The position numbers were made by a program, and so were the translations under genes. A stretch of DNA of 64,000 nt from Diadema antillarum (taxonomy: Eukaryota): NCBI RefSeq assembly GCF_040938485.1, contig NW_027271552.1, forward strand, positions 930,001 through 994,000, read 5' to 3'. Positions 16,057-58,484 of the stretch are shown here, one piece after another; positions within the stretch are counted from its first letter, which is position 1; each line of letters starts with the position of its first letter. Below the pieces are notes generated by a model. That model had not been told where the DNA came from and did not search any database. It saw nothing but the letters and a program-made list of their open reading frames with translations.

Positions 16057-16403
16057 TTACATAACGCTGCAAGATCTTTCATCTCTTGGTTTTGGGGGTT
16101 CTGGATTTGGGTCTGGTTTTGTGTTTTTTGCAGACTTTTTGACTGGTTTGGGTTCCTCGATAATGATTTCTTGGTTCTTTAACTCAAGATTGTAGGCATT
16201 CTGATCACAAGTCCTCAAAATCGTCCAAAGAAACTTCAGCAGCTGAATGTCTTTATCGATGTCCTCCTCGTGATTATCCTCCGTGTAATTTGCCAACAAG
16301 AGAACTCTGTTTTTGTTGTCGACGATGTGATGTACACTCTGGAGCACCGCGTTGGAGTCTGGGTATTCGTCCCCATGGGTTATGACGAGTAGCGGTGAAG
16401 TCA
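16057..16403 (-). CDS. Gene A exon 10: G4-like LLVITHGD, IFI44-type C-terminal helix, K/P-rich tail, CaaX (RSCSVM*)
   Basis: ctacag acceptor. LLANYTEDNHEEDIDKDIQLLKFLWTILRTCD matches the IFI44 pattern ISNY...D..KD.LIL..L..ML...D. Ends CSVM-stop. Confidence 0.9.
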
Positions 16404-16479
16404 CTGTAGACAGATTCGAGAGGAAATGATAACGGACGACTCGCCGGTTAGATATATTTTAAATACACCTTTATGTATA

Positions 16480-16552
<73 letters not shown>

Positions 16553-55400: not shown

Positions 55401-58400
55401 CTCTTGAAATTTCTGTGGGAATTGGAATGCGTAATAAAAAGTATTGAATTATCGGAATCTTCAGCAAGACAAACTGAGCAAAATTTTGCAGTCATTTGGA
55501 CACACTGAACCTTAATTTCAGGTTGTTCATAGTGCTTCATAATCACTATAACCAATCATGCCTATATGAACACGAACCCTCGATAGTCATCAATGAAGCT
55601 GGGTCAAAGAACTGACAACTGTAGAAGGTTATATCATGATATGCCTGGAAAAGATTGGAGAAAACTGTGTAAACTGTGTCTTTCTGTCGAGAAGAGGTAT
55701 GACCGCCAAAAATCTGACTCTAACTAAAGTATTATGTATTAATGTATGTGACCGTGCATCACAAAACGAACAAAAAGTCGCAGCCCTTGATTTTACGTGA
55801 AATGTTAAGGTGAAATGGGTCGACCGAGTCAATGTTGAGTTTTTTATGTTTTCTGAAAGAGCTATCCTTCTTCTACATTATTCTTTAGTTTGGGATCATA
55901 ACATGAATGGGAAAGTGTGTTTTCCATGTTCAGCAGTTTTTCTAGAACCCCTTTTAGGGGGAGAGTAGAATGATCAGGTATGACTTAGAGGCCCCTTTTC
56001 ACTTCTTGAAATCCTTTGCATACTCTTCAATTTCAAGTCTAACTTTTGAATGAATAATGCTACTGCTTTGAAAGTTGGCATTAATCATGGAAAGAATATG
56101 TTAATGGAACACACCTAATTTCAGCTTAATCTGATAATCCTTTCATTGTTGTTGCTCCGGTGGTTTACATTCTGTGTTTTGTCCCTTTCATCATACAGCT
56201 AAACAAGGCTTGGTAAAGATTAAGCACTTGAATAGACCGTGTACTTCAGAACCTCTTTTCTCAGTTCACACTTTTCCAGAGTATGTGCTTTGTTTCCAGT
56301 ATTTAGATAGGTTAGGGGAGTCCATTTGAAATGAGTTATACATCATTTTAAAGCTTATAGTCTGTTCTTTCAGAAACTGCCCTTAACTAAAAATCCATGT
56401 CTGGCAACTTTTTGTTGGTTTTGTGATGCAGGGTCACATATTATGTCAGCATCAAATACCCATTCTATACCTATTCCTATTCCGTCAAGAACTGACATTT
56501 CTCTCCAATCTAATGAAGAAAAAAACAACAACTTAAAAACATTAATAAATTTGAAACCGCAAAATACATGATGTGATGGGTATGTCAAGCCCGTAAAGAG
56601 TACATAAAACTTGTATAGCAACTGCCTATACAATTTATTTACAGATGGCAAATGAAAGCCATTTCCAAACCGATATTAATCGGTATCTTATTTCATTTCA
56701 AGGACAAGTTCACCTTCATTAACATAAGAATTGAGATAATGTAGCAATATTAGTAGAACACATCATTGAAAGTTTGAGGAAAATCGGACAATCCGTTCAA
56801 AAGTTATGAATTTTTGAAGTTTTTGTGCAGTCACCACTGGATGAGAAGACTACTGCAGTGTATGATGTCACATGCGTACAACAATATAAGGAAAATATAA
56901 AGAGAATTTCACAAAATTTCATCTTTTGAAAAAAGTACACATTCCCTTGACTCTTTACTAGTATGTTATGGGTAATATTATTCCCATTGCCTTTAGAAAG
57001 AGGCAAGTCAAGTGCTCTTTTATTATGCGAAAAAGGGGAAAATATGTTGAATTTTCTTTACATTTTCTTTATACTGTTGTACTCATATGACATCACGAGC
57101 CTTAGTAGTCTCCTCATCCAGCGGTTCCAACACAAAAGTTTAAAAAATTCATAACTTTTGCATCGATTGTCCAATTTTCCTCAAACTTTCACTGATGTGT
57201 TCTACTAATATTGCTGCATTCTCTCGATCCTTATGTTAATGAAGGTGAACTTGTCCTTTAAGTAATTTAAAATATTCTTCCGGTAATACCTAAATTAATG
57301 AAGTCGAAACACATCAGGTGATCAAGACACCTCTCAAAAAAGGTGAAGAAGGGAATAAAAAATGTAAAAAAGACGCACGTTAAAAAAAAAAAAAAAAAAA
57401 AAGAATACCAGTACAACGTTCATCTACCAGTCTCGGTCATTTCTCTTTAAACTCCAATGACAGGAATTAGTCAGTACAGACAGGAATCGTTCGAGATTCT
57501 CACTCTGGCCGGATTTCCGGGTATTCAGAGGCGGCTGGTCCAGCGTGAAAGCAAATCGACAATCAATGTATGAACGACGTATCTTTTAGACGAATTAATC
57601 AACTTTTTTTTCATTAACGATAATTGGCTTTCAAATTTCATGAAACTGTCAGATATAGCACATCATAACATTTCAGATAGGACACAAGGAATGTTATCGA
57701 TAAATTACTAAAAGAATGATAGATCGAGGATTTTGAACTCCAATTAGTGTCATCTAGCTGTATCACGACGTAGATTCGTACAATGTATGCTTTCAATGCG
57801 GATCAAAGTACATGTAGGTAATTAACGTCGATTCCACTCTAGCTTTGCACACACGTACTGTATGTACAAGCGAGATACTGTATACTAGAGTTCACTTTAG
57901 CTAAAGGAAGTGACTCCGACAACGAGAATAGAATCAAAGTCATGCATCTTTCTTTCATTTTGAAAGCTTCAATGATGTTTTATTTTCAGATGTTGATGTG
58001 CGTGGCGAAATTTGAGGAGAATTCACTCATATTCTCTACTCCAGAGTATCATTCTGAGCTGGCAGTAATGTGATGAAACTTCAGATGTTGATGTGCGTGA
58101 AGAAATTTGAAGAGAACTCACATATTCTCTACTCCATAGTTTCATTCTGGGCTAGCAGTAATGCCATCAAACTCCATTTTGAGAGCACTATACTGGTATG
58201 AAATAACAAAGCACGGCACCGGAAATGAAAGTAAAAATAAAATTTCCAGACACTATATTCAGATATCTACACTATAAATAAAATCATCTGCATGCTGACA
58301 TTTATGACATAGTCAATTAAAATGCTTGATTTTATTTTCCAATTTATTTAAACCAATGACATGAGATCAAATATCAAAGAAACTCATTAAAAAAAAAATT

Positions 58401-58484
58401 ATGCTGACATTCTTATTCTTCCGTACCTTGGAAATGAGTTAATGCGTACAACAATGAAAGTTTGCATACATGTTTAGACCGCAT
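41655..58484 (-). CDS. Gene B (paralogue of A, ~578 aa): signal peptide(?)-IgV-IgC2-TM-IFI44-like GTPase-CaaX
   Basis: Exons 55086-54778, 53759-53424, 52062-51919, 50177-50112, 48767-48606, 46213-46049, 45100-45013, 42842-42775 and 41995-41655 join in frame with the same phases as gene A. Exon 1 (58484-58427) is tentative. Confidence 0.85.
42775..42842 (-). CDS. Gene B exon 9 (TEIGEHEANKFIHHFFQEVKKIHG)
   Basis: 68 nt, phase 2-1, tttgcag acceptor, G|GTACG donor. Confidence 0.86.
43250..44400 (-). mobile_element. 5'-truncated CR1/L2-clade LINE, reverse transcriptase fragment, in gene B intron 8
   Basis: [67 protein letters not shown]..AWG and FWNSL, with stops and frameshifts. Confidence 0.93.
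45013..45100 (-). CDS. Gene B exon 8 (NGCRSMDTEHKIVKDKSKECHAAILVYHK)
   Basis: 88 nt, phase 1-2, with the same boundaries as gene A exon 8. Confidence 0.87.
46049..46213 (-). CDS. Gene B exon 7: G2/G3 (GGGHTKQ...VQDNRG)
   Basis: cctacag acceptor, A|GTAAG donor, 165 nt, phase 1-1. Confidence 0.9.
47106..48277. mobile_element. Composite GC-ended non-autonomous DNA element (CAYCGGCGTARCCA-type TIRs)
   Basis: Left end catcggcgtaaccagg and right end ccttggctacgccggtg, with internal ggggg..tcccc sub-repeats. No clean TSD. Confidence 0.45.
48606..48767 (-). CDS. Gene B exon 6: GTPase P-loop (VNINLFGQMSAGKSAFINSLFFAFK)
   Basis: 162 nt. The last 25 residues are 24/25 identical to gene A. Donor G|GTAAG. 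Confidence 0.92.
49899..50100. other. Assembly gap (202 N) in gene B intron 5
   Basis: Run of N starting 11 nt after the exon 5 donor. Confidence 1.
50112..50177 (-). CDS. Gene B exon 5: 66-nt linker (GLTWIPCWKKPSEKDIPLIKRR)
   Basis: gtatag acceptor, G|GTAAT donor just before the N-gap, phase 1-1. Homologous to gene A exon 5. Confidence 0.8.
51919..52062 (-). CDS. Gene B exon 4: transmembrane helix (MGLGIGLTLFILVLVIIVLFLVTG)
   Basis: tttacag acceptor, G|GTAAA donor, 144 nt, phase 1-1. Followed by KLLQKYRPEIMPE. Confidence 0.9.
53424..53759 (-). CDS. Gene B exon 3: C2-type Ig domain
   Basis: LDCRLTGFKPNVSLVW...NFTCTTSG. Acceptor ctctcag, 336 nt as in gene A. Confidence 0.9.
54778..55086 (-). 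CDS. Gene B exon 2: V-type Ig domain
   Basis: RLPCMF...VYW...LIITNLEVPDEGYYQC. Acceptor ttaaccag, donor G|GTGCG, 309 nt, phase 1-1. Confidence 0.92.
55747..56370 (+). mobile_element. Second copy of the 16559-17155 interspersed repeat
   Basis: Diverged but collinear alignment by eye. Confidence 0.75.
56701..57257. mobile_element. TTAA-target MITE, family 4, with ~240-bp TIRs
   Basis: TTCA|AGGACAAGTTCACCTTCATTAACATAAG ... CTTATGTTAATGAAGGTGAACTTGTCCT|TTAA. Confidence 0.8.
57985..58165 (+). repeat. Two tandem ~94-bp units
   Basis: ttcagatgttgatgtgcgtg...catattctctactcc...gcagtaatg occurs twice. Confidence 0.85.
58427..58484 (-). CDS. Candidate gene B exon 1 (MRSKHVCKLSLLYALTHFQ-G), weak signal peptide
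   Basis: The only ATG-initiated, phase-1, stop-free candidate I found upstream of exon 2. The start MRSK resembles gene A MDRSK, and the donor AAG|GTACG is the same type as gene B exon 9. The hydrophobic core is short. Confidence 0.4.

What the first reader, a model, noticed from the sequence alone, without database searches (positions are those of the whole stretch)
16057..58484. Tandem family of Ig-receptor GTPases: signal peptide-IgV-IgC2-TM fused to an IFI44-family GTPase
Seen: two complete 10-exon paralogues with matched exon phases join an extracellular two-Ig module and a TM helix to a cytoplasmic GTPase. The GTPase has G1 GQMSAGKS, a G2 Thr, G3 DNRG, G4-like THGD/THRD, and the ..ANY..E.D..KD..LL.FL..IL..CD tail. 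Established: those motifs, especially THxD and the C-terminal NY/KD helix, are characteristic of IFI44/IFI44L, which are cytosolic interferon-stimulated proteins with an N-terminal TLDc domain and no TM. Here TLDc is replaced by an Ig ectodomain. Inference: this is a single-chain immune receptor in which ligand binding directly controls an antiviral/antimicrobial-type GTPase. I do not know of a described receptor class with this architecture. It would parallel the Ig-TM-NACHT (NLR-like) fusions I recall from sea cucumbers.
Basis: partly seen in the sequence, partly recalled or inferred. Interest (0 to 1): 0.95.

Follow-up and report, generated by a model that had tools for sequence, protein, structure and literature searches.

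The report
Sea-urchin Ig receptors with IFI44-like GTPase tails
Two neighbouring sea-urchin genes each encode a cell-surface antibody-like receptor whose inner end is a GTP-binding domain resembling the poorly understood antiviral protein IFI44, and sister receptors in the same genus carry an NLR-type (NACHT) domain in that position, so this looks like an undescribed branch of a modular immune-receptor family.

Summary
On the minus strand lie two paralogues, gene A (28919-16057) and gene B (at least 55086-41655). Each has ten coding exons with GT-AG introns and matching phases, and the two are 63% identical. The domain order is IgV, IgC2, TM helix, juxtamembrane exon, P-loop G domain, long C-terminal helix, then a CSVM CaaX box. 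Both N gaps lie in introns, and no exon is missing.

The fusion is not an artefact of hand-joining. RefSeq models from D. antillarum and D. setosum show the same architecture. One is gene A's orthologue and runs from signal peptide to CSVM. About 15 such models exist.

The G domain matches IFI44/IFI44L best by predicted fold (Foldseek E 1e-9 to 1e-13). No sequence search reaches IFI44, and there is no TLDc domain. It is therefore an IFI44-like G domain, not an IFI44 orthologue.

New context: the same Ig-TM-juxtamembrane front end (53-60% identical) is fused to NACHT in about 24 Diadema models. That architecture (Ig plus NACHT) was characterised in a sea cucumber as a membrane pattern receptor. 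I found no paper on the GTPase version. Other windows of this genome carry unverified first-reader notes of similar genes. Verdict: a new variant of a known kind.

The parts
28847..28919 (-). Gene A exon 1: start codon and signal peptide (MDRSKDLILLLIATACVSCGPVAK), ends in phase 1
   Evidence: Conserved in D. setosum (L001 39842-39922) and as the N-terminus of D. antillarum model P0057.
25956..26267 (-). Gene A exon 2: IgV domain (phase 1-1)
   Evidence: Pfam V-set E 1.3e-13; boundaries.
24081..24416 (-). Gene A exon 3: IgC2-type domain with an extra N-terminal Cys pair (phase 1-1)
   Evidence: Pfam C2-set_2 21.2 bits against a cut-off of 21, and C1-set.
23466..23594 (-). Gene A exon 4: stalk, TM helix and the basic stop-transfer stretch GKLLQIYKPELIPD (phase 1-1)
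   Evidence: Helix 247-276 in the model of orthologue P0057.
22828..22875 (-). Gene A exon 5: 48-nt juxtamembrane exon (LSRIPGWKKPLIDPR). It is a diverged copy of the family's CGWNPCWRRP module.
   Evidence: Donor is GTAAGC. Reading past the donor meets TAA.
21896..22057 (-). Gene A exon 6: pre-G helix and P-loop; G1 GQMSAGKS at 21953-21930
   Evidence: weak Pfam Dynamin_N/MMR_HSR1 P-loop hits.
20896..21035 (.). Assembly gap inside intron 6 of gene A; it does not touch coding sequence
   Evidence: A aligns to P0057 with no gap at the exon 6/7 junction. The ungapped equivalent intron of B holds no conserved block.
19600..19761 (-). Gene A exon 7: switch I region with the invariant Thr, and G3 DNRG at 19660-19649
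18893..18980 (-). Gene A exon 8 (phase 1-2)
17880..17947 (-). Gene A exon 9 (phase 2-1)
16057..16403 (-). Gene A exon 10: strand 5 with THGD (16380-16369), long C-terminal helix, Pro/Lys-rich tail, CaaX CSVM (16071-16060), stop at 16059-16057
   Evidence: This exon was the query of the exhaustive HMMER search.
54778..55086 (-). Gene B exon 2: IgV domain
   Evidence: Pfam V-set E 5.6e-10.
53424..53759 (-). Gene B exon 3: IgC2-type domain
   Evidence: Pfam C2-set_2 E 2.3e-6, 28 bits.
51919..52062 (-). Gene B exon 4: stalk and TM helix
50112..50177 (-). Gene B exon 5: 66-nt juxtamembrane exon (LTWIPCWKKPSEKDIPLIKRR); the donor GT lies 11 nt before the gap
   Evidence: Matches residues 243-267 of D. 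setosum model P0001.
49899..50100 (.). Assembly gap inside intron 5 of gene B
   Evidence: B aligns to P0001 over 528 residues with no gap.
48606..48767 (-). Gene B exon 6: P-loop, G1 at 48663-48640
46049..46213 (-). Gene B exon 7: switch I and G3 DNRG (46109-46098)
45013..45100 (-). Gene B exon 8
42775..42842 (-). Gene B exon 9
41655..41995 (-). Gene B exon 10: THRD (41972-41961), C-terminal helix, tail, CaaX CSVM (41669-41658), stop
58427..58484 (-).
   Evidence: Lies in 58543-58372, a segment missing from the collinear D. setosum locus. Weak hydrophobic core. No better candidate found.
5565..5642 (-). Signal-peptide exon of a third family member; the rest of that gene runs off the window
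   Evidence: tblastn: residues 1-26 of P0009 (a D. antillarum SP-IgV-IgC2-TM-GTPase model) match at 96% identity.

Best explanation
Genes A and B are tandem members of a receptor family expanded in diadematid sea urchins.

Each gene encodes one type-I membrane protein with these parts:
- A signal peptide, shown for A only.
- An extracellular IgV plus IgC2 pair of the B7/butyrophilin kind.
- One TM helix and a short juxtamembrane exon.
- A cytoplasmic TRAFAC G domain of the IFI44-like fold.
- A long amphipathic helix, a Pro/Lys-rich tail and a farnesylation-type CaaX box (CSVM).

The Ig-TM-juxtamembrane cassette is a shared front end. In sister genes it is spliced to a NACHT domain instead, or to a short tail.

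Most likely mechanism (inferred, not shown):
- The Ig ectodomain binds a microbial or non-self ligand and clusters the receptors.
- This brings the G domains together at the inner leaflet, where the TM helix and the C-terminal farnesyl both hold them.
- The G domains then dimerise or oligomerise in a nucleotide-dependent way, as related septin/GIMAP-type GTPases do.
- They would play the same signalling or scaffolding role that NACHT oligomerisation plays in the sister receptors, for example driving phagocytosis or membrane remodelling.

G1 and G3 are intact, so nucleotide binding is plausible. At the G4 position the Lys is replaced (THGD/THRD), so base specificity and catalytic rate are uncertain.
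For: Gene structure:
- Ten exons, canonical splice sites, identical phases in both copies, intact ORFs.
- Both halves are under purifying selection: A vs B dN/dS 0.11-0.37. B vs D. setosum GTPase exons 6-9 give 0.14.

One transcription unit:
- RefSeq models of D. antillarum and D. setosum join the same parts.
- P0057 is 89.6% identical to A from signal peptide to CSVM. P0001 is 88.8% identical to B with no gap.
- All 15 RefSeq models that carry this G domain also carry the Ig part. The length-limited profile search (144-458 aa) returned no RefSeq model with the G domain alone.
- On a tree of IgC2+TM, 15 of 16 GTPase-type receptors group together (SH-aLRT 89), apart from the main group of NACHT-type receptors.

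Domains:
- Pfam V-set and C2-set. MMR_HSR1 is above its cut-off on P0009 (26.6 bits).
- The AlphaFold model of orthologue P0057 shows two beta sandwiches, a 30-residue helix, a G domain and a C-terminal helix (pLDDT 77.7).

IFI44-like fold:
- Foldseek against Swiss-Prot AlphaFold models: IFI44/IFI44L E 1.7e-9 to 2.4e-8, TM 0.62-0.67, covering residues 3-245. Other families score about 1e-5.
- AFDB clusters named IFI44-like score 7.6e-11 to 3.5e-7, against 3e-6 for GIMAP7; the two best rows (1.3e-13, 6.4e-13) carry no name.
- ESM Atlas features and structure agree.

Shared front end:
- 53-60% identity to about 24 NACHT-bearing Diadema models, with the same juxtamembrane motif ending CGWNPCWRRP.

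CaaX:
- CSVM is invariant in A, B, P0057 and the D. setosum read-through, while the preceding tail varies. Related last exons end CSLM, CALM or CSVM.

Functional precedent:
- The sea-cucumber protein AjNLRC4 (Ig plus NACHT) is a membrane receptor that binds microbes through its Ig domain and drives phagocytosis (PMC8699970).
Against: - No transcript data were available. The RefSeq models are computational and could share my bias toward phase-compatible exons.
- Both P-loop exons have an in-frame ATG inside the polypyrimidine tract just upstream of the acceptor. A separate start cannot be strictly excluded.
- Gene B has no verified signal peptide.
- No sequence-level link to IFI44 was found. 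The profile against PDB gives only IRGb10 at E 0.07.
- Pfam's best full-length match on P0057 is AIG1 at 21.3 bits, below its 27-bit cut-off.
- The fold model has moderate confidence (pLDDT 73.8).
- G4 is degenerate. Deleting the G1 region of human IFI44 did not reduce its antiviral effect (bioRxiv 10.1101/2020.02.24.963900), so GTPase chemistry may not be the point.
- Immune function, ligand, clustering and prenylation are all inferred.
Confidence: 0.7

Rival explanations
1. Two adjacent genes wrongly joined. An Ig-TM protein with a short tail would end after exon 4 or 5. A separate cytosolic, farnesylated IFI44-like GTPase would start at the P-loop exon. The pair would have duplicated together.
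For: - In-frame ATGs lie just upstream of both P-loop exon acceptors.
- A CaaX box is typical of soluble GTPases and unusual on a type-I membrane protein.
- Short-tailed Ig-TM models with the same front end exist in Diadema.
- Reading through the exon-4 donor meets a stop quickly: after one further codon in B (PEGK*) and after 14 in A.
- No transcript evidence was available.
Against: - The ATG-containing stretches are T-rich splice tracts and are not conserved as protein between A and B.
- Exons 4, 5 and 6 all have phase 1-1 in both genes.
- The length-limited profile search returned no RefSeq model with the G domain alone, and 15 of 15 G-domain RefSeq models include Ig.
- Exon 5 is the module that links TM to NACHT in sister genes. 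The Ig-plus-NACHT architecture was validated experimentally in a sea cucumber.
- The front-end phylogeny largely tracks the cytoplasmic domain type.
Confidence: 0.1
2. The architecture is real, but the G domain belongs to the GIMAP/AIG1 (or IRG) lineage rather than the IFI44 lineage. The IFI44 resemblance would then be a general property of septin-like TRAFAC GTPases with flanking helices.
For: - Pfam AIG1 aligns nearly full length on P0057 (profile 2-197 of 212, 21.3 bits) and on P0001 (15.7 bits).
- The nearest solved structure is GIMAP7 (E 8e-5).
- The profile against PDB touches IRGb10 in G1-G3 (E 0.07).
- The Atlas lists a chordate V-set plus AIG1 cluster, and an 'AIG1-type G domain' cluster at TM 0.77.
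- No sequence search reaches IFI44.
Against: - The AIG1 hits are below Pfam's cut-off. No GIMAP chain reaches E 10 with the family profile.
- IFI44/IFI44L AlphaFold models beat plant IAN, Toc and EngB by three to four orders of magnitude. They also align over the N- and C-terminal helices.
- No animal GIMAP is in the top 30 of Swiss-Prot. Clusters named IFI44-like rank above GIMAP7 in AFDB clusters.
- PDB holds no IFI44 structure, so its ranking cannot speak for IFI44.
Confidence: 0.15
3. The proteins are real Ig-TM-G-domain receptors but are not pathogen sensors. They could act in cell adhesion or self-recognition, or as nucleotide-bound scaffolds with no catalysis (pseudo-GTPases).
For: - V-C2 ectodomains of the B7/nectin/butyrophilin kind often bind host ligands (Pfam C2-set_2 and C2-set_3).
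- G4 lacks the Lys.
- The IFI44 G1 region is dispensable for its antiviral effect.
- No expression or induction data are available.
Against: - The family shares its front end with NACHT receptors and is expanded in tandem arrays, like other echinoid immune families.
- IgV has the highest non-synonymous divergence of the folded domains between the paralogues (dN 0.34 against 0.18 for IgC2).
- G1, the switch-I Thr and G3 are invariant or nearly so across the family.
Confidence: 0.2

Closest known systems
IFI44 / IFI44L (vertebrate interferon-induced protein 44 family)
   Same: - The cytoplasmic domain has its best fold matches here.
- G1 is GxxxxGKS.
- G3 is DxxG followed by a hydrophobic residue, as reported for IFI44.
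- G4 is incomplete, as reported for IFI44.
- Helices flank the G core.
   Different: - No TLDc domain.
- Has a signal peptide, two Ig domains, a TM helix and a CaaX box.
- No detectable sequence similarity (about 19-20% identity in the structural alignments).
- Interferon itself has not, to my knowledge, been described in echinoderms.
Echinoderm Ig-TM-NACHT receptors (AjNLRC4 of Apostichopus japonicus, PMC8699970; 'NLRC4-like' RefSeq models in Diadema)
   Same: - In Diadema the IgV-IgC2 ectodomain, the TM helix and the juxtamembrane module are the same cassette, 53-60% identical.
- Both couple an extracellular Ig sensor to a cytoplasmic nucleotide-binding domain.
   Different: - The cytoplasmic module is a TRAFAC G domain with a CaaX box, not a STAND NACHT ATPase.
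- The sea-cucumber protein was described with two TM segments.
GIMAP/AIG1 immune GTPases
   Same: - Nearest solved structures: GIMAP7 3zjc and GIMAP2.
- Sub-threshold Pfam AIG1 match.
- GIMAP GTPases are immune-associated, and from memory several are membrane-anchored and dimerise through the G domain.
   Different: - Below the family cut-off.
- Weaker fold scores than IFI44.
- From memory, some GIMAPs carry a C-terminal hydrophobic anchor; none has an N-terminal receptor.
Prenylated interferon-inducible GBPs (GBP1, 2, 5)
   Same: An immune-type GTPase with a C-terminal CaaX box (the GBP CaaX boxes are from established knowledge).
   Different: - GBPs are large, dynamin-like, soluble proteins.
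- Here the CaaX box sits on a protein that already has a TM anchor.
Chordate 'IFI44-like' clusters carrying Ig domains, and a V-set plus AIG1 cluster (ESM Atlas automatic annotation)
   Same: - An Ig domain combined with an IFI44-like or AIG1 G domain.
- These are the top feature hits for full-length P0009 (score 0.88). They match its G domain structurally (TM 0.77 by query).
   Different: - Only cluster names and Pfam shares were visible.
- Whether these proteins have a TM helix, or share ancestry with the Diadema fusion, could not be checked.
- A score under 0.9 is a lead only.

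Membership tests
IFI44/IFI44L family | N-terminal TLDc domain | tested here: not met
   Pfam finds V-set, C2/C1-set and generic GTPase hits, and no TLD, on P0001, P0009, P0005 and P0057.
IFI44/IFI44L family | C-terminal G domain with G1 GxxxxGKS and G3 DxxG followed by a hydrophobic residue (as described) | tested here: met
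   GQMSAGKS and DNRG followed by Met in both genes. Both motifs are conserved in the family alignments.
IFI44/IFI44L family | G-domain fold closest to IFI44 rather than to other TRAFAC GTPases | tested here: met
   Foldseek gives IFI44/IFI44L E 1.7e-9 to 2.4e-8, against about 1e-5 for EngB, IAN, Toc and EF-Tu. AFDB clusters named IFI44-like score 7.6e-11 to 3.5e-7. Atlas results agree. Model pLDDT is 73.8.
IFI44/IFI44L family | Sequence or profile homology to IFI44 proteins | tested here: inconclusive
   The exhaustive phmmer search with the last exon gave 14 hits, none shown to be an IFI44: the five RefSeq-named ones are Diadema 'uncharacterized protein' models and the library carries no names. 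Two word-indexed searches of the G domain found only Diadema models and one ENA last-exon fragment. No IFI44 profile or sequence was available for a direct profile-profile test.
IFI44/IFI44L family | Interferon-inducible cytosolic protein | not testable with these tools
   No expression data. The predicted TM helix argues against a soluble protein.
Type-I immunoglobulin-superfamily receptor | Signal peptide, Ig domains with the canonical Cys...Trp...Cys pattern, a single TM helix, and a cytoplasmic C-terminus | tested here: met
   V-set and C2-set are above Pfam cut-offs. The patterns LPC...YW...YxC and LDC...W...FxC are seen in the sequence. TM helix. The signal peptide is shown for A only; for B it is unresolved.
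Echinoderm Ig-TM-NACHT receptors | Shared Ig ectodomain, TM and juxtamembrane module | tested here: met
   53-60% identity of the P0009 front end to NACHT-bearing Diadema models. A common juxtamembrane motif follows the TM helix. In A and B this motif has diverged.
Echinoderm Ig-TM-NACHT receptors | Cytoplasmic NACHT domain | tested here: not met
   No NACHT hit on the GTPase-type models. NACHT scores E 1.1e-23 on sister model P0034.
GIMAP/AIG1 | Pfam AIG1 at or above its gathering score | tested here: not met
   21.3 bits on P0057 and 15.7 on P0001, against a cut-off of 27.
CaaX-prenylated proteins | Cys at position -4 of a cytosolic C-terminus, conserved across relatives; actual lipid attachment | tested here: inconclusive
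   The motif is present and conserved: CSVM in A, B, P0057 and the D. setosum read-through, and CSLM, CALM or CSVM in related last exons. Lipid attachment cannot be tested here.

The most novel reading that the evidence does not exclude
Diadematid sea urchins run a plug-and-play receptor system. One Ig-TM-juxtamembrane front end is coupled by exon shuffling either to a NACHT domain or to an IFI44-like G domain. This would imply that the IFI44-type G domain is a ligand-triggered oligomerising signalling module, equivalent in role to NACHT. The A/B subclade would add a second membrane anchor (farnesyl). That would make these the first receptor-coupled IFI44-type GTPases, and a natural system for working out what the IFI44 G domain does.
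Probability: 0.4. Interest if true: 0.8.

Novelty: new variant of a known kind. Interest (0 to 1): 0.68.

Why it matters
- IFI44 and IFI44L are prominent interferon-stimulated genes with poorly characterised function, and the role of their G domain is unclear. A lineage in which the same fold is wired directly to an extracellular Ig sensor, and is interchangeable with NACHT on one receptor chassis, gives a testable hypothesis for that domain: induced-proximity oligomerisation at a membrane.
- It extends the known echinoderm Ig-NACHT membrane receptors into a modular family with more than one cytoplasmic nucleotide-binding module.
- A TM helix plus a CaaX box on one chain is an unusual topology.
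- Diadema has suffered mass die-offs, and its immune gene families have been named a conservation-genomics priority (PMC13511894). These tandem, fast-diverging receptors are candidates for such studies.

Tried and rejected
- Pfam on single GTPase exons: too short, only weak P-loop hits.
- phmmer and profile searches against PDB sequences: nothing significant. RsgA scored E 0.64 and IRGb10 E 0.07.
- Two word-indexed searches of the G domain, one with a single sequence and one with a profile: only Diadema models and one ENA last-exon fragment, no IFI44.
- Locating gene B's signal-peptide exon: a hydrophobicity and phase scan, DNA alignment to A's exon 1, and tblastn with nine family signal peptides. 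Nothing was significant. An alternative candidate at 57958-57886 is identical in D. setosum, but that whole region is 94% identical, so this proves nothing.
- Identifying the ENA sample ERZ26222911, which holds several related last exons: no DNA was retrievable.
- Looking for transcript-derived contigs of P0057 and P0009: only genome records were found.
- Seven literature searches for Ig/TM plus IFI44-like receptors in invertebrates or fishes. Six ran and found no such paper.
- My first coordinates for B exon 5 (50173-50108) were off by four bases. They were corrected. The TM+exon-5 dN/dS values used the wrong frame for that 21-codon exon and should be discounted.
- I did not hand the spliced window proteins to the search or folding tools, because they have no reference. 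Orthologous database models (P0057, P0001) were used instead.

Full report
**What is in the sequence**

A DNA comparison of the two halves of the finding gave eight collinear conserved blocks on the minus strand. Reading their borders showed AG acceptors and GT donors at every block. A ninth small block, a juxtamembrane exon, came to light because a database homologue carries extra residues between the TM helix and the P-loop. It is present in both genes: A at 22875-22828 and B at 50177-50112.

With a first coding exon, each gene has ten coding exons. The phases are identical in A and B: 0-1, six exons of 1-1, then 1-2, 2-1 and 1-0. The open reading frames are 574 aa (A) and 578 aa (B). The first 9-exon models were 63% identical over 540 residues.

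Since duplication, dN/dS is 0.11 for IgV, 0.23 for IgC2 and 0.35 for the GTPase exons. Against the D. setosum orthologue, GTPase exons 6-9 give 0.14. Both halves are therefore constrained coding sequence.

**Gaps**

The gap at 20896-21035 lies in intron 6 of gene A. The gap at 49899-50100 lies in intron 5 of gene B and begins 11 nt after the exon-5 donor. I did not look up or fill the missing letters.

Whether an exon could hide in a gap was tested two ways:
- The ungapped equivalent intron of the other paralogue has no conserved block.
- Orthologous protein models align across those junctions without missing residues. B against P0001 has no gap over 528 residues. A against P0057 is continuous at the exon 6/7 junction.

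**What failed**

That segment is absent from the otherwise collinear, 81-94% identical D. setosum locus. Its hydrophobic core is weak. No family-like signal-peptide exon was found within 9 kb upstream in this window or in D. setosum. The D. setosum RefSeq model also starts inside the IgV exon.

Gene A's exon 1 is well supported. It is a good signal peptide, conserved in D. setosum and in D. antillarum model P0057.

**Domains**

- The IgV exons hit Pfam V-set at E 1.3e-13 and 5.6e-10. The next exons hit CD80-like C2-set at or above the cut-off.
- The TM exon encodes a hydrophobic helix of about 21 residues followed by a basic stretch.
- The cytoplasmic part has G1 GQMSAGKS, an invariant switch-I Thr, G3 DNRG followed by Met, and THGD/THRD.
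- In the folded model THGD/THRD sits just after strand 5, where canonical GTPases (from established knowledge) carry G4. The Asp is kept and the Lys is replaced.
- An AlphaFold model of gene A's orthologue P0057 (89.6% identical) shows a signal helix, two beta sandwiches, a 30-residue helix, a pre-G helix, the G domain, a long C-terminal helix and a disordered tail (pLDDT 77.7).

**Is it one gene?**

An exhaustive HMMER search of 1.8 billion representatives with A's last exon found only 14 proteins. The five long ones with names are RefSeq 'uncharacterized protein' models of Diadema setosum and D. antillarum, and four of these join Ig domains and a TM helix to the G domain or part of it. Further searches brought the count to about 15 models with both parts.

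- P0057 is gene A's orthologue and runs from signal peptide to CSVM.
- P0001 is gene B's orthologue.
- P0009 is a complete SP-IgV-IgC2-TM-GTPase protein.
- Other models have two or three IgV domains or up to three IgC2 domains.
- The length-limited profile search (144-458 aa) returned no RefSeq model with the G domain alone.

The window is collinear with both species' loci at roughly 67-95% DNA identity, so it comes from a close relative. The order B then A is conserved in D. setosum. A third member's signal-peptide exon lies at 5642-5565.

These are computational models and I had no transcripts. I put the single-gene reading at about 0.85-0.9. The rival rests on two points: in-frame ATGs inside the splice tracts of the P-loop exons, and the oddity of a CaaX box on a TM protein.

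**Is the G domain IFI44-like?**

By sequence it is an orphan:
- Pfam gives only MMR_HSR1 (26.6 bits on P0009) and sub-threshold AIG1 (21.3 bits on P0057).
- PDB sequence searches give nothing significant.
- No search reached an IFI44 protein.

By predicted fold the answer is clearer. The model of P0001's cytoplasmic part (pLDDT 73.8) was compared with three libraries:
- Swiss-Prot AlphaFold models: IFI44 and IFI44L of chimpanzee, human and mouse take five of the top six places (E 1.7e-9 to 2.4e-8, TM 0.62-0.67). They align from the pre-G helix to the C-terminal helix. EngB, plant IAN, Toc and EF-Tu follow near 1e-5.
- AFDB clusters: clusters named IFI44-like, from a scallop, an oyster and what look like fish entries, score 7.6e-11 to 3.5e-7, and GIMAP7 scores 3e-6. 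The two best rows (1.3e-13, 6.4e-13) carry no name.
- Solved structures: none is an IFI44, and the best is GIMAP7 at 8e-5.

ESM Atlas features and structures agree with the IFI44-like reading. There is no TLDc domain. I therefore file this as an IFI44-like G domain, not as a member of the IFI44 orthologue group. I keep a GIMAP/IRG-type affinity as a 0.15 rival.

**New context: a shared front end**

Searching with the ectodomain of P0009 returned 51 Diadema models at 49-75% identity, most of them 53-60%. About 24 carry NACHT. For example, P0034 hits NACHT at E 1.1e-23.

The TM helix and the following juxtamembrane stretch, which ends in CGWNPCWRRP, are the same in the NACHT and GTPase classes. 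In the window's subclade this stretch has diverged: A has lost both Cys residues and B has lost one.

On a tree of IgC2+TM, 15 of 16 GTPase-type receptors fall in one weakly supported group (SH-aLRT 89). Gene A with P0057 and gene B with P0001 together form a fully supported subclade of four on a long stem. The picture is one receptor chassis with alternative cytoplasmic modules, most simply produced by exon shuffling between phase-1 introns.

The Ig-plus-NACHT architecture has been characterised in the sea cucumber Apostichopus japonicus. There it is a membrane pattern receptor that binds microbes through its Ig domain and drives actin-dependent phagocytosis (PMC8699970).

The Atlas also lists chordate 'IFI44-like' clusters with Ig domains and a V-set plus AIG1 cluster. 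I could not inspect these further. They lower the claim that the domain combination is unique.

**CaaX**

Genes A and B, P0057 and the read-through of the D. setosum last exon all end in CSVM, although the preceding 30 or so residues vary freely. Related last exons from one ENA sample end in CSLM, CALM or CSVM. The D. setosum RefSeq model splices this ending away.

By established knowledge, X = Met predicts farnesylation. If the box is used, the G domain is tethered at both ends to the inner leaflet.

**Mechanism (inference)**

- Ligand-driven clustering of Ig ectodomains brings membrane-apposed G domains together.
- Nucleotide-dependent dimerisation or oligomerisation follows, as in related septin/GIMAP-class GTPases.
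- This plays the role that NACHT oligomerisation plays in the sister receptors.
- Nucleotide binding is plausible because G1, G2 and G3 are intact. The degenerate G4, and the report that IFI44's G1 region is dispensable for its antiviral effect, leave catalysis open.

**Novelty**

Six full-text searches found no description of an Ig-TM-IFI44-like receptor. The proteins exist only as unnamed RefSeq models.

Earlier unverified first-reader notes of this scan record a similar Ig-TM-IFI44-like gene and an Ig-TM-NACHT-LRR gene on other pieces of this genome, and the CaaX box in this window.

I rate this a new variant of a known kind. The known kinds are IFI44-like GTPases and echinoderm Ig-NACHT membrane receptors. 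Interest is 0.68.

Noticed in passing
window 5565-5642 (-): Signal-peptide exon 96% identical to residues 1-26 of D. antillarum model P0009 (SP-IgV-IgC2-TM-GTPase). A third tandem family member starts here and runs off the window's low end.
   Followed up: partly
window 43256-44412 (-), intron 8 of gene B: Three overlapping ORFs of a decayed non-LTR retrotransposon. The ORF at 44140-44412 hits Pfam RVT_1 (E 6e-7).
   Followed up: partly
window 58372-58543 and 56694-57259: Two segments (172 bp and about 565 bp) upstream of gene B have no counterpart in the collinear D. setosum locus, so they are insertions here or deletions there.
   Followed up: partly
gene B vs L001 (D. setosum OZ188201.1:24155926-24198368): Divergence is very uneven along the orthologous gene. 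IgC2 has dS 0.013, GTPase exons have dS 0.31, and the last exon is only 75% identical in protein. Flanking and intronic DNA identity falls from about 90% in the 5' half to about 80% in the 3' half. This could reflect gene conversion among paralogues or a mosaic history.
   Followed up: no
L001:29650-30030 (+): D. setosum RefSeq model P0001 (XP_072175652.1) splices out of the last exon and ends ...IHGTVEVKK. The uninterrupted reading frame ends in CSVM, as in the window's genes. The model may describe a minor isoform or may be wrong at its 3' end.
   Followed up: partly
window 22752-22875 (-) vs P0057: D. antillarum model P0057 has an exon 5 about 14 codons longer than gene A's. In this window that extension is closed by an in-frame TAA, so only the upstream GTAAGC donor keeps the frame open.
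   Followed up: yes
window about 34000-39300, between genes B and A: A block of several diverged copies of a repeat unit roughly 0.5-1.2 kb long. It gives multiple staggered matches to the same intergenic region in D. setosum and D. antillarum.
   Followed up: no
ENA sample ERZ26222911 (no DNA retrievable): At least nine related last-exon ORFs (P0002, P0004, P0007, P0010-P0015). Three different CaaX endings occur among them. For P0004, a V-set ORF lies about 10 kb upstream on the same strand. This is probably another echinoid assembly carrying the same family.
   Followed up: partly
Diadema RefSeq models P0020-P0026, P0029, P0042: Short-tailed members with the same Ig-TM front end, some ending right after the juxtamembrane module. 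They may be decoy or co-receptor forms, truncated gene models or pseudogenes.
   Followed up: no
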